A stretch of 14,417 bases of DNA from Paramicrosporidium saccamoebae KSL3. Taxonomy: Eukaryota > Fungi > Cryptomycota. Below the pieces are notes generated by a model. The model ran no database searches, had not been told where the DNA came from, and saw only the letters and a list, made by a program, of their open reading frames with translations. Location of the stretch: contig MTSL01000152.1 in the NCBI GenBank assembly GCA_002794465.1, forward strand, positions 6,234 to 20,650. Reading direction: 5' to 3'. Position 1 is the stretch's first letter. Each line of letters begins with the position of its first letter. Position numbers and translations under genes: made by a program. This document shows positions 2-14,417 of this stretch, piece after piece.

Positions 2-1735
2 ACATCCGCAACGTCACAAACAAAAGCATGGAAATCAAAAGGGCCACAGTTCAGCTCAAAGGATCTTGGAATTGACATTAGTCTATTCCCGTCCTGTGTC
101 TCCTTGCCGCCCGGTGATTTCAGACGCGATGAACCAAGGCATGAGGAGCCTAAGCGCAACGAAGCTAACCGCGGTGGACCGAAACAGCACGAACAAAAGC
201 GTGGTGGAATGAATCCTGATGATTCAAGAGGCAGATCTCATTCGGAGCAAAGAAACAATGGTGAAGGATACCCTGAACTAGCTCGAAAGGCACACATAGA
301 GCCTCCAAATAGATCAATGAGCAGCAGCGCCGACTCTAAGAAAAGAATTAATGATTTAGTCCGCTCAATTGGTATGAAAAAAGAAGCTAGTCCGCATGAA
401 GAGATGAGTGGCAATCTCAATAGACCTCTGCGGATTAGAGAAATCCCCGAAGACGGTCCTGGTTATGTTAAAACGCGGTCAGTTGAGCGGGTGCCATTCC
501 AAAAGGCGCCGCGTCAAGAAGATCCCACTGATCGTGAATACAGTCGAGGCTGGGTTGAACACAAGTCTGTGAGAGTGGACGACTGGGAAAATGACGAATC
601 TGATGGCGAGACCCACCATATTGGGCCTGCAGTCGACCTCCATGCTGAGTATTACTGGAAACAGACTGGAGAATACCTGGACGACTTTTCCGAGTCCCAA
701 CCGGTGATGCATCAACCTGCTCAACGTCGTCCAACGGCCACAAAGACTGTCACTGCTCAGATGCAAGATGCTCGTTGCACTGGTGCTCAGGCTGATCCTT
801 GGCAGTCAGTAGAGGCTCATTTGCGCTACAATGAGTATCCGCGCGAAACAAACGAGTCTTTTGGATGGAATGGCAGCGAAGAGCCTTCTAAAGCAATGTC
901 AAGCAACTACAACAGCCCTAATCGGTTTGATGAGTCAAACTATGGTGAGAGTGTTGGGTATGGAAATGAAGCCTGCGTGGGTATCGGGTATGGAGATGCA
1001 GCCTGTAAAGGTGCGGAGTATGAAAATACAGTCTGTAAAGGTGTTGGGTATGGAAATGCAGCCTGTAAAGGTGTGGGGTATGAAAATGCAGTCTGTGAAG
1101 ATGGTGGCCAGTACTACAATGGCGCTACATACTATGACATGGCACCTAATAGTGCCACATACTATGATGCTGTATCCACCTGCAGTGCTACCTGCGACAA
1201 TTCCGTTCGTGTTGATGACAGTCATGTCCAAAGGGATGAAAAGTACAATAGCAGCCCCTCCACTTATAAGGACACTGCTTCCACTTATAAGGACACGGCT
1301 TCCACTTATAAGGACACGGCTTCCATTTATGAGAACACTGCTTCCACTACTTACGAAAGCACTGCCCCCACCGCTTACAAGGACCCTGCTCCCACTACTT
1401 GCAAGAACACTGCCCCCACTTACAAGGACATTGCCTCAATCGTCGCAACTGCAGACCATCATAATGTCCCGACTACGGACGCCGCTCCGACTATGGACGC
1501 TGCTCCGACTACTAGACGTCGATCACTGGACACTTATTCGCCATGTCTCCTTCCCGACGCCCAGGAACTGCGCGCACCATCAAATTACAAGCCCGATGGT
1601 GTGGTGTTGGACAAGGGACAATCGTGGGTGACTTGTCCGTTTTGTCATAACGGCTTTGGCTATCCGCCCGTCATGCTGCCCACTCCACCATATTCTGGCC
1701 TGGTTAGCAGTGCTGCCTTTACTCCGAATCCCTAA
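2..1735 (+). CDS. Hypothetical low-complexity, repeat-containing protein, 5'-partial
   Basis: The frame of ORF 104..1735 has no stop from position 2 (TSATSQTKAWKSKGPQ...), so the TTG at 104 is not the true start. The protein is charged/disordered, then carries Tyr/Cys/Thr repeats and ends in a CPFC motif and Pro-rich tail. No family recognised. Confidence 0.7.
   Translation, partial: TSATSQTKAWKSKGPQFSSKDLGIDISLFPSCVSLPPGDFRRDEPRHEEPKRNEANRGGPKQHEQKRGGMNPDDSRGRSHSEQRNNGEGYPELARKAHIEPPNRSMSSSADSKKRINDLVRSIGMKKEASPHEEMSGNLNRPLRIREIPEDGPGYVKTRSVERVPFQKAPRQEDPTDREYSRGWVEHKSVRVDDWENDESDGETHHIGPAVDLHAEYYWKQTGEYLDDFSESQPVMHQPAQRRPTATKTVTAQMQDARCTGAQADPWQSVEAHLRYNEYPRETNESFGWNGSEEPSKAMSSNYNSPNRFDESNYGESVGYGNEACVGIGYGDAACKGAEYENTVCKGVGYGNAACKGVGYENAVCEDGGQYYNGATYYDMAPNSATYYDAVSTCSATCDNSVRVDDSHVQRDEKYNSSPSTYKDTASTYKDTASTYKDTASIYENTASTTYESTAPTAYKDPAPTTCKNTAPTYKDIASIVATADHHNVPTTDAAPTMDAAPTTRRRSLDTYSPCLLPDAQELRAPSNYKPDGVVLDKGQSWVTCPFCHNGFGYPPVMLPTPPYSGLVSSAAFTPNP
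950..1099 (+). repeat. 30-nt coding tandem repeat x5, consensus GVGYGNAACK
   Basis: Units translate to SVGYGNEACV, GIGYGDAACK, GAEYENTVCK, GVGYGNAACK, GVGYENAVCE. Tyr and Cys are invariant. Confidence 0.95.
1259..1435 (+). repeat. 21/24-nt coding tandem repeat (STYKDTA-type) x8
   Basis: TCCACTTATAAGGACAC(T/G)GCT x3, one diverged 21-mer, three 24-nt variants (STTYESTA, PTAYKDPA, PTTCKNTA) and a final 21-mer (PTYKDIA). Confidence 0.95.
1469..1513 (+). repeat. 18-nt coding repeat x2.5 (PTTDAA/PTMDAA/PTT)
   Basis: CCGACTACGGACGCCGCT CCGACTATGGACGCTGCT CCGACTACT. Confidence 0.85.
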
Positions 1736-1835: not shown

Positions 1836-2750
1836 CTACTCTTTTTTGTCGTTGGAATCCGTCTTGTTCTTTTGCTTCATGACACCACCAGGCTGCCATG
1901 GCGCAGCAAAAAACTTTCCCATAGAGAACCACGATTCGTCGTAGAAACGGAACATGCAAAAATGACTGTACGGGTCGGAGGAACCAGAATGTCGAGAGCG
2001 CAGCCGTTGGCCTGGCTTCTTGCCCATAATCTCGTCTTCCAGATATTTTTGTGGTGTGCCCAGAATCTCAGCCATGGGCGACCGCACCAAAGAGCTAGCT
2101 TGCTGCTCTAACACTGGACGCCAGTCCACATCGCCGACACTGCGACATGGCTGCCATCCACGTACAAAGCCCAACTTGGCATATAATGCAAACGATTCGG
2201 CGGCAAATTCAGTAGTCAAGTCGACATCTAATCCCAACAACAGTCTGCTACCCAACTTGGCGTGCCGACGCTGCTCCTCCACACCCTCAGCAATGAGACG
2301 CTTTGCAATACCGCGACCACGATAGGCGGGGTCCACACAGACATTGTACATGGAGATTGCAGTGCTGGGTGCCGCCGTCTCTATATGAAAGGAAATGAAG
2401 CCGACTACAACACCGTCATCCAGAATGGCTGAATTGTGGTAATATTTGAGGATGAGCTTCATGTTTTCGTGGCAAGCAGAAAGATCCTTGTAGATAGAGT
2501 CGGGTTCAGGGAAACATGGAATAAGAATACGACAGGCGTCGCCCTTGGAATTGGCCGTGTGGACGTCTGTGACCTGCTGGCCGGCATGCTGATGCGCTAT
2601 GCTCAGCTTCCCCGCATCTGGAATGGCCTTTTCAGTCTTAATGGATGGAGCCTCTTGCCCAACATGGCGACCGGCATAAAATGTGCCTATTAAAACGGCC
2701 CCCAATAGCGCAAAAAAGACGCCATACTTGACCAGCCGACTTCGTATCAT
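1836..2750 (-). CDS. GNAT-family N-acetyltransferase with N-terminal signal anchor
   Basis: 304-aa ORF from ATG. It has the acetyl-CoA-binding motif A (MYNVCVDPAYRGRGIAKRLI) and motif B (LYAKLGF). A hydrophobic stretch GVFFALLGAVLIGTFYAG follows basic residues at the N-terminus. Confidence 0.85.
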   Translation of the reverse strand: MIRSRLVKYGVFFALLGAVLIGTFYAGRHVGQEAPSIKTEKAIPDAGKLSIAHQHAGQQVTDVHTANSKGDACRILIPCFPEPDSIYKDLSACHENMKLILKYYHNSAILDDGVVVGFISFHIETAAPSTAISMYNVCVDPAYRGRGIAKRLIAEGVEEQRRHAKLGSRLLLGLDVDLTTEFAAESFALYAKLGFVRGWQPCRSVGDVDWRPVLEQQASSLVRSPMAEILGTPQKYLEDEIMGKKPGQRLRSRHSGSSDPYSHFCMFRFYDESWFSMGKFFAAPWQPGGVMKQKNKTDSNDKKE

Positions 2751-2771
2751 TACGGGTGTTTCAAACCACCC

Positions 2772-2781
2772 TGACCAATCA
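2772..2781. promoter_or_regulatory. TGACCAATCA CCAAT-box motif upstream of the GNAT gene
   Basis: NF-Y/HAP-type CCAAT consensus 21 bp from the GNAT ATG (2750). The identical 10-mer recurs at 7620 and 12356. Confidence 0.55.
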
Positions 2782-2823
2782 GGAAGTCTGTGAACTATGT
2801 ATAAAAGATGGTTACCTATTCAA

Positions 2824-2901
2824 AGTCCATTCACTCTAACCTCACTTTACAATCATTCAGTTCATTCACTCTAACATTACTTTACAATCATTCAGTCCAT
2901 T
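2824..2901. repeat. 35-bp tandem duplication (2.2 copies), intergenic
   Basis: AGTCCATTCACTCTAACCTCACTTTACAATCATTC / AGTTCATTCACTCTAACATTACTTTACAATCATTC / AGTCCATT, with 3 mismatches between the full copies. Confidence 0.9.
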
Positions 2902-2920
2902 AGGCCATTTAGCCCTTACT

Positions 2921-3259
2921 CTAGCGTCGACTCTGCGTGGAATACTTTTTGCGTTCATAGAACATGTCCATCCGTGCAGAACCAATATTCACAATCTTGG
3001 GGCAGCCATCGCGGTCCTTTTCTTGCAGACAGCAGGCGTGGCAATAAAACGCCTCTGTGCTTCCTGGACCACCACAAACCACACAGCGGTCCCGCTGTGC
3101 TCCAAAGTTACATTCGTCGCAGATGCGCACAGCAGCCGTGGGTCGCACATACGAGTCACACAGCACACAGCGACCGTCACAGCGTTCACACAGCTTTCCC
3201 ACCACTATTCCCGGTAGTTTTCGACACATTACCAGGTCCGGATGATGTCGAGCCGCCAT
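2921..3259 (-). CDS. PHF5A: PHD finger-like domain protein 5A (SF3b subunit, Rds3/Ini1)
   Basis: 112 aa, [11 protein letters not shown]...[18 protein letters not shown]...RICDECNFG...[25 protein letters not shown]. Close match to the recalled PHF5A/Rds3 consensus with the Zn-binding Cys pattern intact. Confidence 0.97.
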
Positions 3260-3389
3260 CCCAGTCTAGTATCCGCTGTGCTGCACCCTGGCCGCAACTG
3301 CACACATATAGACATGGAATACGTTTCATACAATAACACTGCAACTTTTATTTAATATCTAATCATCTCACTCTCCCATGAAATTCCCC

Positions 3390-3430
3390 ATACAATGCAT
3401 TCCTCCGACTAGGACTCTAATGCATTGTAT
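3390..3430. repeat. Perfect 12-bp inverted repeat with 17-nt spacer
   Basis: ATACAATGCATT (3390-3401) and AATGCATTGTAT (3419-3430), between the divergent PHF5A and eIF3i starts. Confidence 0.85.
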
Positions 3431-3448
3431 ACCCTGGTCGAGGTGAGA

Positions 3449-4438
3449 ATGATTCCGATTTTACTTCAGGCACATACTCGTTCACTGACAAAGGTGATCT
3501 ACAACCACTCGGGAGACCTGTTGTTCTCGGCCAGCAAGGACGACAAACCCAATGTGTGGCGCACTATCAACGGAGAGCGACTGGGTTCGTATAACGGCCA
3601 CCGCGGAACGGTTTGGTCGTTGGATGTGACTCGGGACAGTGCCATTCTGGCTTCGGGTTCGGCCGACAATTCCTTCCGTCTGTGGGACGTGGAGTGTGGA
3701 AAGTCGCGTAATGCGGTGGAGACGGACACGGGAGTTAGGAGTGTGGCCTGGGCCATGGGTGACCAACTGTTGGCAGTTCTCACTGACAATACGATGGGCT
3801 TTACTGCATCCGTCCTAATCTATGACGTCCGTGCCGGGGAAGTTGTTCGCAAAGTGCTTCCCAACGAAATTGGCAAGAAACCAACCATTGTTCGTTGGAC
3901 CGACTGTAACGAGGCCCTCCTGACCGGCCATGATGACGGCCACGTCGCCCTCTGGGACGCCGCCTCCTCCAAACTGCTCACCTCCACCCGTCCCCACAGT
4001 GACACTATTCGCGATTTGCAATTCAGTCGCGATCGCACCTATTTCATCACTGCCTCCAAAGACACCACGGCCAAGCTCATTGAGACTGCCAATCTCAAGG
4101 CCATCAAAACCTATCAGACGGAACGGCCTGTCAATTCAGCTGCCATTTCGCCCGTGCGGACGGAAGTTTTGGTTGCCGGTGGTCAGGAAGCCCTCAATGT
4201 CACCACCACCTCCAGTCGCGCCGGTCAATTTGAGGCACGCTTCTTCCACGAAATTTGGGAGAGTGAAATTGGCAGGGTGAGGGGCCATTTCGGACCCATC
4301 AACACCCTCGCTTATGCCCCCGACGGACGGGGCTATGCCAGCGGTGCCGAAGACGGTTACATCCGTCTGCACTCCTTTGATCCCGACTATTATGAGTTTG
4401 CCATGATAGATCCCGATTTGGACGAGCCTCTTCTTTAA
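3449..4438 (+). CDS. EIF3I: Eukaryotic translation initiation factor 3 subunit I (TIF34), WD40 protein, 329 aa
   Basis: The start is reassigned from TTG 3425 to ATG 3449 because MIPILLQAHTRSLTKVIYNHSGDLLFSASKD matches the family N-terminus. Other diagnostic segments: GERLGSYNGHRGTVW, TYQTERPVNSAAISP, GGQEALNVTTTSSRAGQFEARFFH, GHFGPINTLA, GAEDGYIRLH. Confidence 0.97.
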   Translation: MIPILLQAHTRSLTKVIYNHSGDLLFSASKDDKPNVWRTINGERLGSYNGHRGTVWSLDVTRDSAILASGSADNSFRLWDVECGKSRNAVETDTGVRSVAWAMGDQLLAVLTDNTMGFTASVLIYDVRAGEVVRKVLPNEIGKKPTIVRWTDCNEALLTGHDDGHVALWDAASSKLLTSTRPHSDTIRDLQFSRDRTYFITASKDTTAKLIETANLKAIKTYQTERPVNSAAISPVRTEVLVAGGQEALNVTTTSSRAGQFEARFFHEIWESEIGRVRGHFGPINTLAYAPDGRGYASGAEDGYIRLHSFDPDYYEFAMIDPDLDEPLL

Positions 4439-4443
4439 ATAAA
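4438..4443 (+). terminator. AATAAA polyadenylation signal overlapping the eIF3i stop codon
   Basis: CTT TAA ATAAAG: AATAAA begins on the last base of the TAA stop. Confidence 0.5.
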
Positions 4444-4663
4444 GTGTTATCAAGGTATGTGTCCAAAGCGTTATTACAAGATGTGATTAGAGTTGAAATA
4501 CATTGTACTTGTATGCACATAATCTCTTTTTCGAGAATGATAAACCATCAGTATATCCTATTAAATAATACTCATCACATGTACAGTATATCACAGTTTA
4601 CCACTTCCATCACTAATGTATCACATCAAACAAAATTACCCACTACAAATCGCTATGCACGCA

Positions 4664-7594
4664 TTACAATACAAGTCGTTTTAGAGATTTACGGGGATTA
4701 GTCTCCAGCGTCTTGGCAAGATCACAGAGAACAATTCCGTTTCCAGTGAGAATCAGTTCGTGCAGAGTCACATTCACCTCAAGGGCTGTCCCTAGTGCTC
4801 CTAAATGCTCTCCCGCCAGACATCCAGCCAAATCGAGGACCCGCAGACTGGACGTCTTTCGGATCAGTTCAGCAAGTCCCATTCCGGAAATTGCGTCCAT
4901 CGGACAATACGACAATATCAACCTCTCCAACCCCTCCAGATAGTGCAAATCACCCAAATCAACCCCGCAAATATCAACTCCCGACAAGTCCAGTTCCTTC
5001 AATTGCGGATGACTACTGGTAATGGTTTTGATAAACTTGGAAAGATTAACAATATCACAAAACTGGCTCCTTAGACACTTTACTGGTATGGGTGGGATGG
5101 TGTGGACAAAAGTAAAGGAAATGTCCAGTTCCTGAAGTGACTTTAGTGCTGCCAACTCTTCCAAAACTCTATCAGTAACCAGATGGTTGTGACTTAGATC
5201 CAGTGACACAATTTCGCCAGAATAGCTCGCCACGGCACGAATCACCAAATCAAAATGAGATTCATCATGTATCCATCGGCTCACATCGATCTTTGCATCA
5301 TCAGTAGAGAGGCTGGCTAGTACTGCCGTGTTCACTGTTAATCCACACTCGTTGCACAGTACAGTGTATATCTGAGCCAGACTTTGAGTCTTGAATCCAA
5401 CAACTCGAGCTCGCACACTCTGTCCATCCGATAAGACCACTGCTACGGGATCGCCTCCGCAAAGCCGTGCACCATCCTCCGTTAGCAAGGCGTCAATAAG
5501 CGGCTCTTTTCCTCCAAAATCCGCCCGATACCGTGCGGCAATCTCTCCAATCAGCCAAGAAATGGTCCTCTGTTCAGCAATATCATCAATGATCGGGATT
5601 ATAAGCGCTTCATCAAATATGAGCACTTTGACCCTGAGGATGGTCGCTATAAATGCAGGATCACCGCTCCAAGTTCGTCTAGAAGCCGATTTAGTACATG
5701 AGCGTTGATCATCCTGAATGACTGAACGTTTAGGAGACGGCGGCCAAATGAGCTCCGGTTCAGGCATCGGCGGATCGTCATAGTCCATGGCATGGCGTTC
5801 AGGAAGGGAAGGATCTGTCCGACCGTCAGCTTCGTCATCGACGATAAAGCTGCGCATATCACTGTCATTGTCACTAATAACATGTATGCGCTTTTTTCTG
5901 GCCATCTGTGGTTGGACGTTGGTCGTCTTCCGCCGAGCCCTCTTAATCTCTAGGCCTTTTGTGCCGCGCGATCGACTCTTCATATTAAACTGTCCATCAA
6001 CCAGTTTCATGACATTCTTACTCGGCTTTCTATTGACAAAATAATCCAACTGACCAAGTTCAGCTACTATTTGCGCCTCATTTCCTCGATCGTCATCAAG
6101 GTGGTGTTGGCGCCACAATGTCATGCATTCCTCTTTAATCTCCATATATTGGTTGTCCAGCCCCAGTCGCTTGTATGCACTAGCGAGCTTGCTAAGTATG
6201 TCAATTTCCCGAGGCCGGCTAGTTTTTTGTCGAGACAGATCCAGAGCTTTCTGCAACACTCGCAATGTCTCGGCTGGAAGCGTAGGCAACAACCAATATG
6301 AATCAGAAAGCAACAAAAGAGCGTCAATGCAAGCTTTCGTGTCCCCATCAGGCTCAATAATGCCAAGGTGTTTTTTGGCAAAATACACGCCATCCTGGCC
6401 ATGGCCTTGTTCAATGCAGAGTTCACATGCAATCCGCAGCGCTTCCGCATCACTGTCTAGTTCATCGGCACCCTTGCGAGCATACAGGATTGCATCTTGA
6501 TGAAACCCAAGTTGTCTGCAATTACGTGCCAGTTTTAAATACGTCTTTCCTGTATGCCTGTCATTCTTAATTTTGGCCTCTAATGCGGTAATCTTTTCGG
6601 CGACACTTTTAAATTCTAAAGTAGTTTGGATTTCTTGATCGGCATCTTCAAGTTTGGCAGAATCGACACACTGCATTTTGACATGGTCCTTGTACAAGTA
6701 GAGAGTCTTTAAGGACAGCTCAAAGTCCCACAGATCCCTATAGGCAAGTCCAAGGTTCAGGAGGGCCTCGGACTCAAATTCCGGCTCCTTCATCTCCTTT
6801 GCCAAAGTGAGCTGCAAATCGAAACACTGTTCAATGGCCGACGCCGTTTCCTTCATTCCAAGAAAGGTCTGTCCCATCAAGCCCAAGATTTCAAATTGCA
6901 ACATTTGATCTTTCAAATCACGTGCACCGTCAAGCGCAATCCGCAGCTTTGTCAGTGCAGCGTCGTACTCTTCTGTCTGCATACACAGTCGGCCATCATT
7001 CACACGGGCTCGCAGCCGTAGTCGCTTCAAGTCAGTCCGACGATTAGAGGACAAGAGACCATTCTCGATCAGTGTCTCGTAATCGTCAAGAACTTTATGT
7101 CCCCGGTAAAAAGAGACTCCTGCCTCTGCCAATATTTCCTTACATACCAAATCAACAGTCTCTCCCTCAGCCTCAGATAAAAACAAATTACCAATGGAAG
7201 AATGGGCGTTAAAGGCCTGAGGCATATTCTGATTTTTCAACGCAAAGTCTAGTTGTTCTTGAAGATGGCTCTTTGCCAAATCTATCATCCCCATTGAGAG
7301 GAATGTATCAGCCATATTCCCCATGGCTAACAACAATCCGTCCACATCTCCCGCTGCCTCTGAAATCTGTCGATCATAATGGTGGAAATTCAATGCCTTT
7401 CGATACTCGCAAAGTCGCTCATATGTTTTGGCGATATTGTTGCACAATCGGGACTCTTCCACCAGGTCGCCCTTTTTCTGTGTCTCCAAGAGTTGCCGCT
7501 CAAGACGCTCGACTTGTTGGTCAAGACGGTCCTCGAGACTACCGGATGGAATGGGGGCGGGCTTGCGACAGGACACGACACCAGTGGCCAACAT
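4664..7594 (-). CDS. TONSL: Tonsoku-like (TONSL) protein: N-terminal TPRs, disordered linker, UBL domain, C-terminal LRRs; no ankyrin repeats
   Basis: 976-aa uninterrupted ORF. The N-terminal TPR array (~aa 20-495; KKGDLVEESRLCNNIAKTYERLCEYRKALNFHHYDRQISEAAGD) parallels the TONSL N-terminus as recalled. LRVKVLIFDEALIIPI...TISWLIGEIAARY...EDGARLCGGDPVAVVLSDGQSVRARV (~aa 652-735) matches the TONSL ubiquitin-like domain. Ribonuclease-inhibitor-like LRRs follow (LDLSHN, LQELDIS, LKELDLSG, LRVLDLAG, LHELILTGN). Confidence 0.85.
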   Translation of the reverse strand: MLATGVVSCRKPAPIPSGSLEDRLDQQVERLERQLLETQKKGDLVEESRLCNNIAKTYERLCEYRKALNFHHYDRQISEAAGDVDGLLLAMGNMADTFLSMGMIDLAKSHLQEQLDFALKNQNMPQAFNAHSSIGNLFLSEAEGETVDLVCKEILAEAGVSFYRGHKVLDDYETLIENGLLSSNRRTDLKRLRLRARVNDGRLCMQTEEYDAALTKLRIALDGARDLKDQMLQFEILGLMGQTFLGMKETASAIEQCFDLQLTLAKEMKEPEFESEALLNLGLAYRDLWDFELSLKTLYLYKDHVKMQCVDSAKLEDADQEIQTTLEFKSVAEKITALEAKIKNDRHTGKTYLKLARNCRQLGFHQDAILYARKGADELDSDAEALRIACELCIEQGHGQDGVYFAKKHLGIIEPDGDTKACIDALLLLSDSYWLLPTLPAETLRVLQKALDLSRQKTSRPREIDILSKLASAYKRLGLDNQYMEIKEECMTLWRQHHLDDDRGNEAQIVAELGQLDYFVNRKPSKNVMKLVDGQFNMKSRSRGTKGLEIKRARRKTTNVQPQMARKKRIHVISDNDSDMRSFIVDDEADGRTDPSLPERHAMDYDDPPMPEPELIWPPSPKRSVIQDDQRSCTKSASRRTWSGDPAFIATILRVKVLIFDEALIIPIIDDIAEQRTISWLIGEIAARYRADFGGKEPLIDALLTEDGARLCGGDPVAVVLSDGQSVRARVVGFKTQSLAQIYTVLCNECGLTVNTAVLASLSTDDAKIDVSRWIHDESHFDLVIRAVASYSGEIVSLDLSHNHLVTDRVLEELAALKSLQELDISFTFVHTIPPIPVKCLRSQFCDIVNLSKFIKTITSSHPQLKELDLSGVDICGVDLGDLHYLEGLERLILSYCPMDAISGMGLAELIRKTSSLRVLDLAGCLAGEHLGALGTALEVNVTLHELILTGNGIVLCDLAKTLETNPRKSLKRLVL

Positions 7595-7619
7595 ACATAC
7601 GCAAAGGGATCAATCGACG

Positions 7620-7629
7620 TGACCAATCA
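7620..7629. promoter_or_regulatory. TGACCAATCA CCAAT box in the 83-bp TONSL/AHA1 bidirectional promoter
   Basis: Exact 10-mer 25 bp from the TONSL ATG and 48 bp from the AHA1 ATG. Confidence 0.55.
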
Positions 7630-7677
7630 AACGGCCGACGTTCAATGGAAATTTCGGGAAATTTGTTAAACTGAACG

Positions 7678-8622
7678 ATGGATGAAAGTGCAAACTGGAA
7701 GAATGTGAATAATTGGCACTGGTAAGGGCATTTTACATGCATTTATGCGTTTAGGATTGAAAAGGACTGCACTAGCTGGTCACACGACAGGCTAAAAGAG
7801 ATGCTTCCCACTGCAAAGACCATCCTGGATGGGCAGGCATTAAAGGTGACCAAGGTCAACAGCGTCACTGGAGAAGTGAGTGTCAATGTGCGAAAGGGAC
7901 GGATACGGCAGATCTTTGACCTGACCATGGAGCTGACCTGCATGTATGAAAAACGAGACGTGGAGGCACGGATCACTGACTTTATGTCTGATATGGACTA
8001 TGATGATTTCGAATTTACCATGACAGGAGTTGCCGCAAAAGTGCGTGATGCTCTGAAAAAGACTGTCTGGGAGACATTGGTGGAATTTCGGAAGGAAGTG
8101 GAACAAGTCCACGGCAAATCGCTGCTCGTAGAGGGACCACAGACGCCCGCATCGGCTGACAGCGAAAAGTCGAAATTCAACAACTCTTTTGTCGACAAGA
8201 AGGAGAAATCACCCTCAGCCGTTGGCACTATAGAAGAACGGGTAGAGTTTTCTGCGCCCATGGAACAGGTTTGGTTATGTTTGACAGACGTCCCACGAAT
8301 CATGGCGTGGACTAGGGGCACAGCATCATTGAGCTCTGTAGAGCCTGGCGCACCCTTTTCCCTGCTGGGCGGAAATATAACTGGACGAGTAACGGAATTG
8401 GCCACGGGATTGATCAAGATGGATTGGAGACTTCGACATTGGCCTTCCGAACTGGTCTCCACAGTAGAGATAAAGCTAAGCAACGGCGGATCCGGGACGG
8501 TGCTTAAAATGAAGCAGGTGGGGGTGCCATCGGCGGAATTGGACTCGGTAAAGGAGAATTGGCATCGTTACTACTGGGAGCCCATCAAGACGGTCCTTGG
8601 ATGTGCCTCTGCCGTATTCTAA
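7678..8622 (+). CDS. AHA1: Hsp90 co-chaperone Aha1, join(7678..7721,7755..8622), 303 aa
   Basis: Splicing restores MDESANWKNVNNWHW-IEKDCTSWSHDRLKEML, with the NxNNWHW motif. The RKG(R/K) motif (NVRKGRIRQIFDL) and a C-terminal AHSA1/START-like domain (FSLLGGNITG, MDWRLRHWP, ENWHRYYWEPIK) follow. Confidence 0.95.
7722..7754 (+). other. 33-nt spliceosomal intron in AHA1 (phase 2)
   Basis: GTAAGG...TTTAG. Removal joins TG|G to complete the last Trp of NNWHW. Retention gives an immediate TAA. Confidence 0.92.
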
Positions 8623-8953
8623 TTCTTTTAGTAATCGACAATCACTATTATTGTGAGATGAGCTAACTATGGATCAGGGATAGGAATAAAGAGTCTTGCA
8701 CTCAACCCCACAAAGTCCAATAAAAAGATTTGCTAAACAGTGTCCGATTATGATCAGTAATCCTGATTGCCATTTCCCAACCCAGCGTGTTGAGAAGGGT
8801 AGGCTGTGCCCTGTACTTTAATAAAGATTTTCTCCCACTCATCAAGAGTCTCGAGGCCGAACATGCGACTTGAAATAAAGCTTATTTAGGCTCCTCTGAT
8901 TAGTCATCTTTGCTAATTATCCGGCCAATCAACTATTTCACATTTAGAACATG

Positions 8954-9567
8954 TTAGGATTCCGATTCCAGATATTCGGAATAAGTGAGGACAATTTTTC
9001 GAGATTGATAGCGCGTAATGACCATTTGATTCAAGTCCTCGACGCCCATGGTTCCATGATATCCACTCTTTCGGATCAGCGAAGTAATAGTCTCGGCATG
9101 GCTCCAGCCCTCTTCTGCAGCAATTTCGGGCAGATATGTGGCATGGAATGCGCACTCTCCATCATGAAATTTGATTGCTACGCCATGAACGCCAATCTGC
9201 CAGTCGTGGGGATGAGAGGTCGGCTCGAATTGCGATAATAGCGAGACGTGGACCTGCAACTCGGGTAGCTCGTCTTTTGTGATCGGACGGAATCGGCTAT
9301 CCCGCGATGCACTACAGTCAGTGTTAATGCCCACTTACCTGGCGATCGCATATTTACAAAGGACTTCACCCACTGGGAGCGGCGTAAAGGTACCCAGGCA
9401 GCCACGTAATCGTCCCTTGTGTTTCCACGACACAAACGTGGCACTAGACTGAATACGCGGCCATCTTTCTACCATTTTTCCCGTTCAAACTGCCACTCGG
9501 GGAGCGCTTCCCCATCTAAATGACTGCGTAGGACATTGAAGCAATAGACTCCGTGGTGGACTGACAT
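8954..9567 (-). CDS. AMMECR1: AMMECR1-domain protein, complement(join(8954..9311,9339..9443,9473..9567)), 185 aa
   Basis: Spliced product: MSVHHGVYCFNVLRSHL...EKC|ATFVSWKHKGRLRGCLGTFTP...YAIAS|ASRDSRFRPITKDELPELQVHVSLL...DWQIGVHGV...ATYLPEIAAEEGW...TRYQSRK. It contains the family LRGC(I/L)G, DxRFxP and ATYLPE motifs. Confidence 0.93.
9312..9338 (-). other. 27-nt intron 2 of the AMMECR1 gene
   Basis: GTAAGTGGGCATTAACACTGACTGTAG, with a canonical donor and branch-like TTAAC/CTGAC. Removal restores YAIAS-ASRDSRF. Confidence 0.92.
9444..9472 (-). other. 29-nt intron 1 of the AMMECR1 gene
   Basis: GTAGAAAGATGGCCGCGTATTCAGTCTAG. Removal links the YCFNVL exon in frame to TFVSW-LRGC. Confidence 0.8.
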
Positions 9568-9576
9568 TCAGACCTT

Positions 9577-9610
9577 CTGACCGGGGTGGTACCCATTAGA
9601 CACCACTTAC
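9577..9610 (-). other. Candidate 34-nt 5'UTR intron of the AMMECR1 gene
   Basis: AAG|GTAAGTGGTGTCTAATGGGTACCACCCCGGTCAG|AAG has a perfect donor, a CTAAT branch and a CAG acceptor, at the same size as the other introns. No homology support because it is non-coding. Confidence 0.4.
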
Positions 9611-9950
9611 CTTGTGACGGCCGTTGTGACCGTCACTTAAATGAGGTGTCGAGACTAGCGTGGCTATTATAATGCTTGTTGTGCATCCATTGCCTAGAGC
9701 TTCGCTGTAGCCTCACAGTATATTTAAGTAACTAAAATCAAGTGTGTATAGAGGAGCTTGGCTAAAAACGTCAGGTCGAAACCCATTTAGCTTACTGGTG
9801 CCATATATCGCGGAATGTAATGCGCCAATATACCAATATAGCAGTGTATAAACCCGGCTAATGCTTATAGAGCGCCAATATGGGCACTATACACAGCCAA
9901 CTATAGTGCAAGACACTTAATTGGCCCGCTCAAATTGAGTGTTCACAAAC

Positions 9951-11223
9951 ATGTCGTCCGCGTTACCATCGGGTCCGGAAAGCAGCACTTACACTACGGC
10001 AGTCTTATCTAGTCAAGTACCATTCTTTGTGACGCTGACTGGCGCAGAGAGTGGAGCAGGTCTGCAATGTCGGCATCAGTTACTATCCGAATTACCATCT
10101 GACCAAGGCGCGCGAGGAGACCCATCGGCTCAATCTGCTTCTTCTCGGTACCGAGTCGGATTTACTGACATTAGGTGCACCGGGAACAGGAAAGGCCACA
10201 CTGCTCAACACACTACTTCATGGTACGGTGGTTCCCACAACACGAAGTCGTGATGCTGATGACTTTCAAGTCGCCACATATTGTGGCACCCAACAAGAGG
10301 GCAATGTGGCAATGGACGTGGAGATTTCTGAAATTCTGGGATACGGCTCTGACCGACTGGCCGACAAGACTTACTCGCTTCAGATTGTGGAGCTGCTGAA
10401 GCAACGCCACCAGATGAACCATCAGACAGAGAGGAGCAGAGTCGAAAGTGTTGTTCCACAGACAGCGGATCTGATCCATGCCGTTTTGTATTTTGTCCCG
10501 CCCACCTTTATGCAATTTTCGGCGGGTGAGATTGCACTGTTCAAGGATATGCAGCAGCTGACGCTGGTGGTGCCGGTGATCAGTAAGGCCGACATTTACA
10601 CGGCAGCCGAATTAAAGGACAAGAAGCTATTGGTACCAAAGTATCAAGCTTTCATGTTGTAGATCCGTGCCCAGTTTGAGGCAAATGGCCTACCAATGCT
10701 GCCCGATCTGCTGGCAGGCATCTCTGATGCTTGGCTGACAGACCATCTCCATGCCATCAAGGTAATATTCTGCTCCGTTGTACATTTGTAGGCGCGTTGG
10801 CCGTTGGCTGTAATGGGGGGCACTCAACGTCATGAAATGAATGGCGAGTCGATCCGGGCACGAGTCTATCCGTGGGGAGTGATTGACATTGACAATGACG
10901 AATATTCCGACCTGCTGCATCTGCAACGGCTACTAATATCGTCCTTTTTTGTCACTGGCCACGAATATGTACGCCAGGAGCTGTATGAAAAGGTATGGCG
11001 TCCTTGGTTCATGACATCTGGTCTTGATGCATCCGAAGCTCCGCCTAAGCTCACTGATGAAGTGCCAAAGCTGAGGGAACTTTCTACCTGCGGGTCTATC
11101 AAAACTACACCAATCACCGCTTCGCATGAAGTCTTGCCCAAAATGGCGCATTCCACATCCGCTACATCCGTCAAGGAAAAGACATTTTTCTTCGAGTCTC
11201 GGCAAGGGAGCATGTCCAACTAG
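9951..11223 (+). CDS. Divergent septin, join(9951..10016,10048..10147,10175..10632,10663..10761,10792..11223), 384 aa
   Basis: After splicing: VGISYYPNYH pre-G1 segment, LNLLLLGAPGTGKATLLNTLL (G1), EILGYG (G3 position), LIHAVLYFVPP, VVPVISKAD (G4), WPLAVMG, and the septin unique element IRARVYPWGVIDIDNDEYSDLLHLQRLLI...LYEKVWR. All four introns are GT-AG and keep the frame. Confidence 0.9.
10017..10047 (+). other. 31-nt septin intron 1
   Basis: GTACCA...GCTGAC...GCAG links ATG 9951 in frame to the septin exon. The first exon has no homology support. Confidence 0.7.
10148..10174 (+). other. 27-nt septin intron 2 (in frame, stop-free)
   Basis: GTACCGAGTCGGATTTACTGACATTAG has an ACTGAC branch. 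Removal restores canonical beta1-P-loop spacing LLLLG-APGTGK. Confidence 0.8.
10633..10662 (+). other. 30-nt septin intron 3
   Basis: GTACCA...TTGTAG, phase 0. The acceptor TAG is the apparent stop of ORF 10051..10662. Removal gives KDKKLL-IRAQFE. Confidence 0.85.
10762..10791 (+). other. 30-nt septin intron 4
   Basis: GTAATA...TTGTAG, phase 0. Removal gives HAIK-ARWPLAVMG, matching the septin PFAV(I/V)G motif. Confidence 0.85.
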
Positions 11224-11416: not shown

Positions 11417-11962
11417 TTAGTACTTCTTTCTACTCTTTCTACTATTGCGATTCCGTTTCATCAGTCTGTCACGTTCGGCCACCGGGACCACAAACTTGGT
11501 GGCAGGTCGGCCGGAACGACTAGGCGCCTGACTGACGGATGCATGCACCCGGGTGCGCTTATTGTGCAGCATTAATAGCTCTTCTCGGCTCTGTCTCTGC
11601 TTCCTCGCTGCCTCTAGATTGACCCTCGCAACTCTTCTGCTGCCTATCAGCACGACCCGCTCATCCTCCTCCTCTTCAGTCTCGCTGGCCTCTTTGAATA
11701 TCCTTCGGGTGGGCTGGATAGTTTCTTTCCGGGAACGCTCCTTTGGGGCAAGCTGCTGGATAGCAGCGGCTACGCGTGATGCTCGTAGGGTGGCCTGTTC
11801 TTTGAGTTTCGCGTCATGAGCACGACGACGGGCGCGTGCCTCGTTAGTAGCAGAGGCTGTGGCAGTGCTGGACGACTTGAGCTGGGTCAAAAAGGCTGAT
11901 TTACTGGTGGAAAGAGAGACGGCCTCGGGCGCCTCATCATCACTGCTCTCATGATAGGCCAT
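11417..11962 (-). CDS. Probable U3 snoRNP-associated protein (Bud21/Utp16/NOL7-like), 181 aa
   Basis: The N-terminal SSDDEAPEAVS motif is followed by a helical ARRRAHDAKLKEQ segment, a pattern recalled for this family. The C-terminus is Lys/Arg-rich and nucleolar-type. Confidence 0.65.
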   Translation of the reverse strand: MAYHESSDDEAPEAVSLSTSKSAFLTQLKSSSTATASATNEARARRRAHDAKLKEQATLRASRVAAAIQQLAPKERSRKETIQPTRRIFKEASETEEEEDERVVLIGSRRVARVNLEAARKQRQSREELLMLHNKRTRVHASVSQAPSRSGRPATKFVVPVAERDRLMKRNRNSRKSRKKY

Positions 11963-11992: not shown

Positions 11993-12006
11993 CAACCCCG
12001 GGGTTG
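11993..12006. repeat. Perfect 14-bp palindrome CAACCCCGGGGTTG
   Basis: Self-complementary and 30 bp upstream of the ATG at 11962. Confidence 0.7.
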
Positions 12007-12227
12007 GGCACACTTAATCAGCAGACGGAGCCATTCTATTCAAAAATCATGTCAGACCGCTATTAGAGTTTGAATGGATAAATTATTGTAGGATATTATC
12101 CTCTATAAGTGACCATTCTTGACACACTAGTTGTGAGGGCTATCAATGAACAGGGGATAGTGTTTTATAGAGCTGATCTCTACCTTGATGAATCGCACGC
12201 TAGGTGACAGGACCTTTACAAGACACT

Positions 12228-12302
12228 CACAAAGAGCGACCTCATAAAGAGCGACCTCACAAAGAGCGACCTCATAAGGAGCGACCCCATAAAAAGCGAC
12301 TC
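12228..12302 (+). repeat. 15-bp tandem repeat x5 (CA(C/T)AA(A/G)GAGCGACC(T/C))
   Basis: Five units, read as HKERP in the frame of ORF 12204..12452. Located outside any confidently called gene. Confidence 0.93.
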
Positions 12303-12355
12303 TTGTATGTACCAATGAGATATCATCCAATTCTTCTTGGCATAGTTTGGTGGAT

Positions 12356-12365
12356 TGACCAATCA
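12356..12365. promoter_or_regulatory. TGACCAATCA CCAAT box upstream of the secreted-protein gene
   Basis: Exact 10-mer 53 bp upstream of ATG 12419. Further CCAAT/ATTGG motifs lie near 12312 and 12395. Confidence 0.55.
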
Positions 12366-12418
12366 GAGCCATTGTTGGCTGTAAACAAAAACGCATTGGC
12401 TGGTGGACAATCGCACAG

Positions 12419-14417
12419 ATGCGTATCATACTTGCAGCAAGTATTCTTCTAGTGACTGTGACAGGGACAAAGTCGCTAGATGACACACTTGACAACTTAA
12501 AGTCGAGCAATGGACCAAAAATTACTCGCTATGTTCGGCATGCTCTGGACTCGGAGTGCTACATGGAGATGTTAGAGACGGCTATGCCAACGCTCTCTGC
12601 ATTACTCACTAAACAATGGGGTAGTCAGGAGACATACAATGACGCAATGCGCGCAACCCTGGATCTGACCCATGAGACACTACCAGCTGATCTGATCACC
12701 TCTCTCTGGTCTGGGGTAACGCCTACCTTTGATGACGGGGATACCCGGCAGTTTCTAAACAAGGTGAGAGAAATGGAAGCAGGTTTAGAAGTTCAAATGC
12801 GGTTTGTAGCGGCCATGCTGCTAAAGATGCCCGGTGCATTTAAAAAGCATATTGGGAAGAATGACAAGTCGCAATTCTCCTCCTGTCTGAAATTTGCCAA
12901 CGCCATGAGTCTGACAAGCTCCAAAGGCGTCAAGAAGAACTTTGCATCCTGTGCTGGCGACACAATCAGCGAGGACACGATGAGAGCATTGGATGTCATT
13001 TTCATCAACTTTGGTCATTTGGTTGATGTTTACGAGTTGATTGACCGGGACCATTGGCTGTTGAGTGGCCCGGCCCACGATATGGCTATGCTGACGGGCT
13101 CTAGATTCATCATCCATTTGCATCAACAGAAAAAGACTCAAAAGTGGAAAAGTTTTAAAACCTGGCTACAAGAGGGTGGAGCCGATCCACAAGATTTGAT
13201 TTCTACACTGCCACTGTCAACGATAGTTATGATAATGTTCGACACGCGTCTCCAAAAACACGGCGCTGGAAGGGTCGAATTTGCTGATTGGCTTTGGGCG
13301 AGCAATGCGGCAGCCACACAATATCTTCGCACGTTGGCCGATAGACATCCTGAGCCGATTTTTGAGGACCTAGATGAACACAGCTACAGCATGTTCCCCC
13401 GTCCATCTCGTTCTATTGGCCAGATCCAGGATGATACGGAATCGGTAGTTTGTGGACTTTTGATGCTTCACTGCTTTCTACAAGAAAACGGCATCGATGG
13501 CGCATGCAGAAAGGTCCGCAATCTAGCTGTACATCCAATGGTGGCGGTCCGACGGGCCATGGCGACACACCAATATGACATTGTCGACACGAAATGGAGT
13601 AAGAGACATTTTGCGCTACTTCCGTTTATTGATTTCGAGCAATACACAGGAGCAAATCTCAAAGTAATCCCGAAGAAGCTGCCAGTCGGGGCAGCAATGG
13701 TGCAAAATGCCGCGAGTGTTTGCACCGTTTTGGATTGTGAAGGACACGGAGTGAGAGCGCGCACATCTGAATATGCCAATTCCCCACAACATGGTCATCA
13801 GTATAGGGATGATGAAATGAGGTCTATTAGAGGTCAAGGCCTTGGTGATGATCATTTCGGTTCTTCATATGCTGCACAGTCGGGACAGGCTCCCACCATG
13901 AACGGTTATCATCCGCAGCCAAGTGCGCCGCCTATGGATCTAGAAACGGAAGACGAAATGTGGTCCTCTGGGGATCCAGAACAATCTATTGGATACACTG
14001 GACAGTCCGCCAGATATGCAGACTATCCAGAATACAGCGATGCACCGATGGGATATTCTAACCAATACTCGGAACATTTCAACCAATCATCTGGCTATTC
14101 CGACCAAGCGCCCGATCATTACGACCAAGCGCCCGGTTATTCCAACCAACCATCTGAGTATTTTGGCCACTCACCTGGCTATCCCGACCATTCATCCGCC
14201 CAACATCCGGGACGCTCCGCCGCGGGACCCGCCACAAGACGCCCCACTACAGGATACTCGGTGGATCACACATATCAGGCCAATTCAATGTCACAGGTAC
14301 CTCCAGGACTGGAGGACTGTACAGATATATACAATCGATGCATCAAGAACTCTATATATTCGCTGCTAAGCACTCGTCTCAACGAGGAAGAGGCTACTGG
14401 GCTGATGAGTCACATGT
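12419..14417 (+). CDS. Hypothetical secreted protein, 3'-partial (at least 666 aa), not in the supplied ORF track
   Basis: Translated by hand from ATG 12419 with no stop to the window end. An in-frame TGA lies about 60 nt upstream. The N-terminus MRIILAASILLVTVTG-TKSLDD looks like a cleavable signal peptide. About 440 aa of globular-type sequence follow, then a Tyr/Ser/Pro/Gln-rich low-complexity region. No family recognised. Confidence 0.8.
   Translation, partial: MRIILAASILLVTVTGTKSLDDTLDNLKSSNGPKITRYVRHALDSECYMEMLETAMPTLSALLTKQWGSQETYNDAMRATLDLTHETLPADLITSLWSGVTPTFDDGDTRQFLNKVREMEAGLEVQMRFVAAMLLKMPGAFKKHIGKNDKSQFSSCLKFANAMSLTSSKGVKKNFASCAGDTISEDTMRALDVIFINFGHLVDVYELIDRDHWLLSGPAHDMAMLTGSRFIIHLHQQKKTQKWKSFKTWLQEGGADPQDLISTLPLSTIVMIMFDTRLQKHGAGRVEFADWLWASNAAATQYLRTLADRHPEPIFEDLDEHSYSMFPRPSRSIGQIQDDTESVVCGLLMLHCFLQENGIDGACRKVRNLAVHPMVAVRRAMATHQYDIVDTKWSKRHFALLPFIDFEQYTGANLKVIPKKLPVGAAMVQNAASVCTVLDCEGHGVRARTSEYANSPQHGHQYRDDEMRSIRGQGLGDDHFGSSYAAQSGQAPTMNGYHPQPSAPPMDLETEDEMWSSGDPEQSIGYTGQSARYADYPEYSDAPMGYSNQYSEHFNQSSGYSDQAPDHYDQAPGYSNQPSEYFGHSPGYPDHSSAQHPGRSAAGPATRRPTTGYSVDHTYQANSMSQVPPGLEDCTDIYNRCIKNSIYSLLSTRLNEEEATGLMSHM
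14051..14197 (+). repeat. Degenerate 21-nt coding repeat x7 with 42-nt higher-order alternation
   Basis: GYSNQYS EHFNQSS GYSDQAP DHYDQAP GYSNQPS EYFGHSP GYPDHSS. Odd units begin GY; even units begin E/D-H/Y-F/Y. Confidence 0.85.

What the first reader, a model, noticed from the sequence alone, without database searches (positions are those of the whole stretch)
4664..7594. TONSL-like genome-maintenance protein lacking the H4K20me0-reading ankyrin domain
Seen: TPR array, ~155-aa low-complexity linker (about 5640-6100), TONSL-type UBL and LRRs, with no ankyrin consensus anywhere in an uninterrupted ORF. Established: animal TONSL is TPR-acidic-ANK-UBL-LRR, its ANK domain reads unmethylated H4K20 on new histones, and it partners MMS22L. 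Plant TONSOKU/BRU1 has TPR and LRR domains without ANK, and its TPRs recognise H3.1. Budding and fission yeast have no recognised TONSL. Inference: this is an intermediate architecture (animal-type UBL, plant-like absence of ANK) in an apparently fungus-related genome. It points to a post-replicative repair module that marks new chromatin without H4K20me0. This is the best candidate for an undescribed system in the window.
Basis: partly seen in the sequence, partly recalled or inferred. Interest (0 to 1): 0.72.

Follow-up and report, generated by a model that had tools for sequence, protein, structure and literature searches.

The report
TONSOKU-type repair scaffold without ankyrin domain
The gene is a real relative of the TONSL/TONSOKU genome-maintenance protein from an unidentified microbial eukaryote, but its TPR-UBL-LRR layout without ankyrin repeats is the one already known from plant TONSOKU, so it is not a new kind of system.

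Summary
Window 4664-7594 (-) is one uninterrupted 976-aa ORF with an 11-hairpin TPR solenoid (aa 20-515), a disordered linker (532-650), a ubiquitin-like domain (652-735) and ribonuclease-inhibitor-type LRRs (797-975). No ankyrin repeat was found by Pfam, PDB profile search or AlphaFold2.

It belongs to the TONSL/TSK family:
- The best fold match of the TPR is plant TSK/BRU1 bound to H3.1 (7t7t).
- The UBL matches the human TONSL UBL in sequence (E 9e-7) and fold (TM 0.92, 1.3 A).
- A starfish TONSL aligns colinearly over the TPR and the UBL+LRR.

The reading as an "intermediate architecture" and "undescribed system" fails. Published work shows that plant TSK is also TPR, then a middle region with a UBL, then LRR, with no ankyrin domain. 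It marks new chromatin through H3.1K27me0, not H4K20me0.

About 17 ankyrin-less homologues exist. All come from unnamed metagenome or SRA assemblies, and six sit in or on the same contig as the conserved PHF5-eIF3I-[gene]-AHA1 neighbourhood. The source organism is unresolved; the nearest named eIF3I hits are chytrids, at 56% identity or less.

One conserved linker motif, YFxxRKxSK, is undescribed. Verdict: new member of a known kind, modest interest.

The parts
4664..7594 (-). Complete single-exon CDS of a TONSL/TSK-family protein (976 aa plus stop)
   Evidence: The ORF is uninterrupted. The N- and C-termini are shared with full-length homologues P0002-P0004.
6050..7537 (-). TPR solenoid, aa 20-515 (22 helices, 11 hairpins)
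   Evidence: AF2 pLDDT is mostly above 90. The top Foldseek hit is 7t7t_A, TSK/BRU1 with H3.1 (E 7.6e-11, TMt 0.68, 489 columns), ahead of LGN/Pins. BLASTP to the starfish TONSL TPR gives E 4e-12. Pfam TPR_12 matches.
5972..6049 (-). Conserved motif LDYFVNRKPSKNVMKLVDGQFNMKSR (aa 516-541), directly after the last TPR helix
   Evidence: Y518, F519, R522, K523 and L531 are invariant in 13 homologues, and G534 and F536 are nearly so. A regular expression finds the motif in all 17 ankyrin-less relatives examined, including very divergent ones. It lies in the only segment that BLASTP aligns with the syntenic L002 protein. AF2 pLDDT is about 80 for aa 511-520.
5645..6001 (-). Intrinsically disordered linker, aa 532-650
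   Evidence: AF2 pLDDT is below 50. No Pfam domain is found, only SPT2 at E 0.12.
5888..5944 (-). Basic, NLS-like stretch KRARRK...ARKKR (aa 551-569)
   Evidence: Read from the sequence. A basic stretch is present in the homologues. Its function is inferred.
5825..5875 (-). Acidic patch SDNDSDMRSFIVDDEAD (aa 574-590), with a D-x-x-D-F-I motif
   Evidence: A DLxDFI-like motif recurs across the homologues. There is a weak, non-significant SPT2 resemblance. Histone binding is inferred.
5726..5746 (-). WPPSPKR (aa 617-623), containing the CDK-type consensus S-P-K-R
   Evidence: W617, P618, S620, P621 and K622 are invariant among the four closest homologues. Phosphorylation is inferred from the consensus only.
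5390..5641 (-). Ubiquitin-like (beta-grasp) domain, aa 652-735
   Evidence: The family profile hits the human TONSL UBL (9wvh_A) at E 9.1e-7 over the whole domain. Foldseek matches 9wvi_B with TMt 0.92, rmsd 1.3 A and 26% identity. The equivalents of human R934 (R654) and G973 (G695) are conserved.
5225..5380 (-). Helical connector between the UBL and the LRR, aa 739-790
   Evidence: The AF2 helices are confident. The region aligns to the corresponding part of starfish TONSL.
4670..5206 (-). Ribonuclease-inhibitor/NLR-type leucine-rich repeats, aa 797-975 (about 8 repeats)
   Evidence: Pfam LRR_4 and LRR_1 match. Foldseek top hits are ribonuclease inhibitor and NLR LRRs. hhalign to the TONSL UBL+LRR gives probability 99.3%, E 4.5e-20.

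Best explanation
This is an orthologue-grade member of the TONSL/TONSOKU (TSK/BRU1) family with the plant-type layout TPR - disordered middle - UBL - LRR.

The most likely mechanism is inferred from the characterised plant and animal proteins:
- The 11-repeat TPR channel binds the N-terminal tail of newly made, still unmethylated histone H3. This ties the protein to freshly replicated chromatin.
- The UBL lets the protein self-associate.
- The LRR docks a partner, either an MMS22L-like recombination adaptor or an H2A-type histone tail.
- Together these bring homologous-recombination repair to stalled or broken replication forks.
- The linker supplies nuclear import, an acidic histone-contact patch and probable cell-cycle phosphorylation.
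- Recognition of new chromatin would not involve H4K20me0, because there is no ankyrin domain.

What is shown here: the domain identities, their order and their homology. What is inferred: every binding and repair activity.
For: Family membership:
- An exhaustive HMMER search retrieves full-length ankyrin-less homologues. Among named proteins it retrieves tonsoku-like protein XP_022094570.1 of Acanthaster planci (E 3.5e-26), which has TPR + ANK + LRR.
- BLASTP to that TONSL is colinear: aa 26-245 align to 7-260 (E 4e-12) and aa 587-954 align to 1008-1347 (E 5e-12).
- hhalign gives 99.3% probability over the UBL+LRR.
- The best fold match of the TPR is TSK/BRU1 bound to H3.1 (7t7t, TMt 0.68). 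Its 22 helices make 11 hairpins, as reported for TSK (PMC9409234).
- The UBL matches the TONSL UBL in sequence (E 9.1e-7) and in fold (TMt 0.92, rmsd 1.3 A).
- The equivalents of R934 and G973, both needed for TONSL UBL dimerisation and function, are conserved in this protein (PMC13418528).

Layout and selection:
- Plant TSK has the same ankyrin-less layout, and all three of its parts are needed for repair (PMC12710692).
- About 17 homologues keep the layout.
- For six relatives the gene lies next to eIF3I or on the same contig. This argues for a real gene under selection.
Against: - By sequence alone the TPR is as close to LGN/Pins as to TONSL. It does not significantly match the plant TSK TPR (7t7t, E 0.88), so the TPR link to TSK rests on fold and colinearity.
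- The H3 pocket residues could not be compared.
- The salt-bridge partner of R934 (human E1002) aligns with S, R or K here.
- The G973 equivalent is replaced in the more distant subgroup.
- No partner (MMS22L), histone variant or methyltransferase gene can be examined from a 14-kb window.
- No functional data exist for this clade.
Confidence: 0.78

Rival explanations
1. It is a lineage-specific scaffold that shares domains with TONSL/TSK by descent but now works in a different process. Examples would be an LGN-like polarity or spindle adaptor, or a generic TPR-LRR signalling scaffold.
For: By sequence, LGN/GPSM2/Pins are the strongest PDB matches for the TPR. The family evolves fast: the syntenic L002 protein aligns by BLASTP only around the linker motif. 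The UBL dimer-interface partner residue is not conserved.
Against: There is no GoLoco motif or other LGN feature. The best fold match is TSK, not LGN. The UBL is specifically TONSL-type. All three domains are colinear with TONSL.
Confidence: 0.1
2. The ankyrin domain is not truly absent. It is encoded on a separate exon or gene (a split gene, a mis-assembly, or a domain supplied in trans), so the system still reads H4K20me0.
For: None directly. Only 14 kb of the genome is visible.
Against: The ORF runs without interruption through the place where animal TONSL carries its ARD. About 17 independent homologues from different assemblies all lack ANK. No ANK gene lies next to the locus in the window or in four syntenic loci. 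AF2 predicts disorder there.
Confidence: 0.04
3. The conserved YFxxRKxSK...GxF element, together with the acidic DFI patch, is a second recognition or regulatory module that functionally replaces the ankyrin domain. It could be a second histone contact or an intramolecular plug of the TPR channel.
For: It is the most conserved non-domain segment in the whole clade, and it lies in the only part BLASTP aligns with the most divergent syntenic orthologue. It abuts the TPR and is predicted with moderate confidence.
Against: There is no experimental or structural support. It may simply cap the TPR solenoid. It was not shown to be present or absent in plant TSK. Only a loose look-alike (FLSRKSKRS) was seen by eye in starfish TONSL.
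Confidence: 0.15

Closest known systems
Plant TONSOKU (TSK/BRU1/MGOUN3)
   Same: The layout is identical: an N-terminal 11-repeat TPR, a middle region with a UBL, a C-terminal LRR, and no ankyrin domain (PMC12710692, PMC9409234). The TSK TPR-H3.1 crystal structure 7t7t is the best fold match of the TPR here.
   Different: Sequence similarity to the plant TPR is not significant (E 0.88). At 976 aa the protein is shorter than the animal TONSL recovered here (1535 aa). The source is neither a plant nor a named taxon. Whether it discriminates H3 variants at residue 31, or senses K27 methylation, is unknown.
Animal TONSL (NFKBIL2), partner of MMS22L
   Same: The TPR, UBL and LRR are homologous and colinear. 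The UBL matches in sequence and fold, with the R934 and G973 equivalents conserved.
   Different: It lacks the ankyrin repeat domain that reads H4K20me0. It also lacks the roughly 490-aa segment that holds the ARD in starfish TONSL, aa 480-973. The presence of an MMS22L partner is unknown.
LGN/GPSM2/Pins TPR domain
   Same: These are the strongest sequence matches to TPRs 1-7 (E about 1e-13), and they have a similar fold.
   Different: There are no GoLoco motifs. The fold match is lower than to TSK (TMt 0.52-0.62 against 0.68). LGN has no UBL or LRR.

Membership tests
TONSL/TSK family | N-terminal LGN-type TPR solenoid (11 repeats in TSK) homologous to the TSK/TONSL TPR | tested here: met
   There are 22 helices at aa 20-515. 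Foldseek rank 1 is 7t7t TSK/BRU1 with H3.1, E 7.6e-11, TMt 0.68. BLASTP to the starfish TONSL TPR gives E 4e-12, starting at the same N-terminal position.
TONSL/TSK family | TONSL-type ubiquitin-like domain between the TPR and the LRR | tested here: met
   The profile matches 9wvh_A at E 9.1e-7 over chain residues 7-83. Foldseek matches 9wvi_B with TMt 0.92 and rmsd 1.3 A.
TONSL/TSK family | C-terminal ribonuclease-inhibitor-type LRR domain, colinear with the UBL | tested here: met
   Pfam LRR_4 and LRR_1 match. hhalign of the UBL+LRR to starfish TONSL gives probability 99.3%, E 4.5e-20. Foldseek top hits are ribonuclease inhibitor and NLR LRRs.
TONSL/TSK family | UBL residues needed for dimerisation (human R934, G973; salt bridge to E1002) | tested here: inconclusive
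   R654 and G695 align with R934 and G973 and are invariant among the four close homologues. The E1002 position holds S, R or K. G is replaced in the distant subgroup.
TONSL/TSK family | H3 tail binding channel and A31/K27me0 pocket in the TPR | not testable with these tools
   The pocket residues are not listed in the papers that could be read. No residue-level structural alignment or coordinates were available.
TONSL/TSK family | Role in replication-coupled homologous recombination; an MMS22L (animals) or H2A.X/W (plants) partner of the LRR | not testable with these tools
   Only a 14-kb window is available, and no partner gene lies in it or in the syntenic loci.
Animal-type TONSL (subtype) | Ankyrin repeat domain that reads H4K20me0 | tested here: not met
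   No Ank family is found at E<=1 for the whole protein or E<=10 for the linker. AF2 predicts disorder at aa 532-650. The homologues also lack ANK, whereas starfish TONSL shows ANK at aa 545-646.
Plant-type TSK (subtype) | TPR - middle region with UBL - LRR, without an ARD | tested here: met
   The layout is established. The definition comes from PMC12710692 and PMC9409234.
LGN/GPSM2/Pins | C-terminal GoLoco motifs after the TPR | tested here: not met
   The Pfam scan of the whole protein at E<=1 lists no GoLoco family. The C-terminus is a UBL plus LRR.

The most novel reading that the evidence does not exclude
This unnamed eukaryotic clade recognises new chromatin through something other than an ankyrin domain. 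A short linear element fused to the end of the TPR (YFxxRKxSK...GxF), helped by the acidic DFI patch, would act as a second histone or partner contact, or as an intramolecular regulator of the H3-binding channel. The TPR-UBL-LRR layout would then be the ancestral eukaryotic state, and the H4K20me0-reading ankyrin domain a later insertion on the animal line.
Probability: 0.15. Interest if true: 0.5.

Novelty: new member of a known kind. Interest (0 to 1): 0.3.

Why it matters
[quoted passage not shown] I found no open paper linking it to early-diverging fungi or unicellular relatives.

This gene and its roughly 17 relatives show the ankyrin-less TSK layout in an unnamed, gene-dense microbial eukaryote lineage. 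That supports the view that TPR-UBL-LRR is the older layout and the H4K20me0 reader an addition in animals.

The practical gain is modest. It offers a compact 976-aa, intron-free protein for biochemical work on H3-tail reading and UBL dimerisation. It also offers one conserved linker motif worth testing. It does not reveal a new repair system.

Tried and rejected
1. Cryptic ankyrin domain. The UBL profile gave weak hits to designed ankyrin proteins (E 0.3-1, 12-14 bits, profile positions 71-95). These lie inside the confidently folded beta-grasp domain and are not significant, so I rejected them. Pfam on the linker alone found no Ank.

2. SPT2-like histone-binding region. The hit has E 0.12 and scores below the cut-off. 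I keep it only as a remark.

3. Word-index homologue searches. The full-length query found only 3 true homologues. The UBL-region profile that included starfish TONSL found nothing useful. The distribution of TONSL in named fungi and protists therefore could not be surveyed.

4. The exhaustive search list is saturated with generic multi-TPR proteins after about 15 true hits. More distant named TONSL/TSK proteins, apart from the starfish one, were not visible.

5. Sequence-level link to the plant TSK TPR. 7t7t scored only E 0.88 and aligned out of register. I could not check whether plant TSK has the linker motif.

6. Identifying the organism. Four routes failed to name it:
- Cluster names were empty.
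- The NCBI assemblies GCA_048222815.1 and GCA_048222835.1 are not mentioned in any searchable paper.
- The eIF3I neighbour-joining tree puts the clade apart from chytrids, animals and Mucoromycota, with no outgroup.
- The septin is divergent.

7. H3.1 pocket residues could not be obtained from the readable papers.
Full report
**What is there**

Window 4664-7594 on the minus strand is a single uninterrupted ORF of 976 codons. With the window's base composition, the chance of 976 stop-free codons is about 1.4e-21. Three full-length homologues, 41-49% identical, start with the same MLATGV and end at the same point. The gene model is therefore complete and needs no introns.

Pfam finds TPR_12 (aa 52-117) and LRR_4/LRR_1 (aa 796-836) above their cut-offs. 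It finds no ankyrin family even at E<=1.

An AlphaFold2 model built on 13 homologues has a mean pLDDT of 80. It shows:
- 22 confident helices at aa 20-515, which make 11 TPR hairpins;
- a disordered stretch at aa 532-650, with pLDDT below 50;
- a beta-grasp domain at aa 652-735;
- a helical connector at aa 739-790;
- about eight LRR units at aa 797-975.

A Pfam scan of the linker alone at E<=10 gives only a non-significant SPT2 hit and no ankyrin.

**What it is**

Four independent lines place the protein in the TONSL/TONSOKU family.

1. Named hit. An exhaustive HMMER search of 1.84 billion representatives returned a dozen full-length relatives and then generic TPR proteins. Among these was P0148 (E 3.5e-26), whose best stretch is the UBL and the start of the LRR. 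P0148 is XP_022094570.1, 'tonsoku-like protein' of the starfish Acanthaster planci. It has TPR, ankyrin (aa 545-646) and LRR domains.

2. Colinearity. Pairwise BLASTP is colinear: TPR aa 26-245 align to 7-260 (E 4e-12), and aa 587-954 align to 1008-1347 (E 5e-12). Profile-profile comparison gives 99.3% probability over the UBL+LRR. A local HMM places the starfish ankyrin segment and its long flanks (aa 480-973) opposite the short linker here.

3. UBL. The family profile hits the crystal-structure chain of the human TONSL UBL (9wvh_A) at E 9.1e-7 over the whole domain. A second AF2 model of aa 641-976 (pLDDT 87.7) superposes on the TONSL UBL R934W structure 9wvi_B with TM 0.92, rmsd 1.3 A and 26% identity. 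This is the only non-LRR hit among the first 50.

4. TPR. Foldseek ranks the plant TSK/BRU1 TPR bound to histone H3.1 (7t7t) first: E 7.6e-11, TM 0.68 over 489 columns. LGN/Pins come next at TM 0.52-0.62. The 11 hairpins equal the 11 TPR motifs reported for TSK (PMC9409234).

By sequence alone the TPR resembles LGN as much as it resembles TONSL. It does not significantly match plant TSK (E 0.88). The TPR assignment therefore rests on fold, N-terminal register and context.

**Why the 'intermediate architecture' reading fails**

The literature says otherwise:
- The TONSL UBL structure paper aligns the Arabidopsis UBL with the animal ones and reports R934 and G973 as invariant (PMC13418528).
- The ARD is absent from plant TSK (PMC9409234, PMC11997104).

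TPR-UBL-LRR without ankyrin is therefore exactly the documented plant layout. Marking post-replicative chromatin without H4K20me0 is likewise the known plant solution: the TSK TPR reads H3.1K27me0, and ATXR5/6 methylation erases that mark (PMC9409234, PMC11997104). This gene is a new member of that kind, not a new system.

**Likely mechanism (inferred)**

- The TPR channel would bind the unmodified N-terminal tail of newly deposited H3.
- The UBL would mediate self-association. R654 and G695 align with human R934 and G973, whose mutation abolishes dimerisation and repair (PMC13418528). However, the E1002 salt-bridge position holds S, R or K here, and G is replaced in the distant subgroup, so the interface may differ.
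- The ribonuclease-inhibitor-type LRR would bind a partner. In animals this is MMS22L; in plants it is the H2A.X/H2A.W tails (PMC9409234, PMC12710692).
- The linker carries a basic NLS-like run (aa 551-569), an acidic SDNDSD..FIVDDEAD patch (aa 574-590) and a WPPSPKR element that contains a CDK-type S-P-K-R consensus (aa 617-623). These are read from the sequence and are conserved among the close homologues.

None of these activities is demonstrated here.

**Relatives and context**

All ankyrin-less relatives come from unnamed SRA (Logan), ENA or JGI assemblies:
- P0002-4, P0007-10, P0012-15 and P0282 are the closer ones.
- P0071, P0098, P0131 and P0149 are more distant.
- A 943-aa gene lies in NCBI assemblies GCA_048222815.1 and GCA_048222835.1.

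The gene sits in a conserved neighbourhood, GNAT - PHF5 - eIF3I - [this gene] - AHA1 - AMMECR1 - septin:
- L004 has all seven genes.
- L001 has this gene with AHA1, AMMECR1 and septin.
- L002 and L003 have PHF5 - eIF3I - [gene] - AHA1.
- Matching contig lengths indicate that eIF3I and the homologue share a contig in four further relatives.

The syntenic L002 protein is so divergent that BLASTP aligns only one stretch (aa 417-591 here). That stretch runs from the last TPR helices through the linker motif to the acidic patch. The family HMM still spans the protein from the late TPR through the UBL into the LRR.

**The organism**

The source remains unidentified.
- The best named eIF3I hits are chytrids (Synchytrium microbalum 56%, others 49-52%), followed by animals and Mucoromycota at about 50%.
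- Unnamed environmental sequences reach 58-83%.
- A neighbour-joining tree puts the window's clade apart from all three named groups.
- The septin is unusually divergent.

'Fungus-related' is possible but not shown.

**What is new**

One feature is not described in the papers I could read. It is a motif directly after the last TPR helix, [SD]YFxxRKx[ST][KR]...L..G.F.[ML]..[RK], at aa 516-541.
- Y518, F519, R522, K523 and L531 are invariant in 13 homologues, and G534 and F536 are nearly so.
- It is present in all 17 ankyrin-less relatives examined.
- AF2 models its start with pLDDT of about 80, so it may simply cap the solenoid.
- Alternatively it could be a second contact or a regulatory element.
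- Starfish TONSL has only a loose look-alike, seen by eye.
- Plant TSK could not be checked.

**Verdict**

This is a new member of a known kind. Interest is modest: it extends the TSK-type layout to an unsampled microbial eukaryote lineage and points to one testable motif.

Noticed in passing
window 5972-6049 (-), aa 516-541; also L002:11086-13917 (-): A strongly conserved short motif, [SD]YFxxRKx[ST][KR]...G.F.[ML]..[RK], lies directly after the TPR domain. It is present in every ankyrin-less homologue. It lies in the only segment BLASTP aligns with the very divergent syntenic orthologue in NCBI assembly GCA_048222815.1.
   Followed up: partly
window 1836-11223; loci L001, L002, L003, L004: The gene order GNAT - PHF5 - eIF3I - [TSK-like] - AHA1 - AMMECR1 - septin is kept, fully or in part, across relatives whose eIF3I is only 61-77% identical and whose TSK-like proteins have diverged almost beyond BLAST recognition.
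   Followed up: partly
window 5726-5746 (-), aa 617-623: WPPSPKR contains an S-P-K-R CDK-type consensus. It is invariant among the four closest homologues, which hints at cell-cycle phosphorylation of the linker.
   Followed up: no
window 10051-11223 (+): The septin gene is split by one short intron. Its protein is unusually divergent, scoring only about 50 bits against animal and yeast septins in the PDB. This adds to the doubt about where the organism belongs.
   Followed up: partly
window 104-1735 (+): This is a 543-aa ORF with no Pfam match at E<=0.01. L004 holds a 928-aa gene without Pfam hits between its GNAT and PHF5 genes, which is not the corresponding position; any relationship to this ORF was not examined.
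   Followed up: no
window 11417-11962 (-): This is a 181-aa ORF rich in charged residues (SSDDE..., KKQRQSREE..., a basic C-terminus) with no Pfam match. The region 12000-14417 has only short ORFs and may be intron-rich or non-coding.
   Followed up: no
window 5825-5875 (-), aa 574-590: The acidic patch, with a D-x-x-D-F-I-type motif, recurs across the homologues (for example EDFTDFINDSD in the L002 protein). It gives a weak, sub-threshold resemblance to the SPT2 chromatin protein family (E 0.12).
   Followed up: partly
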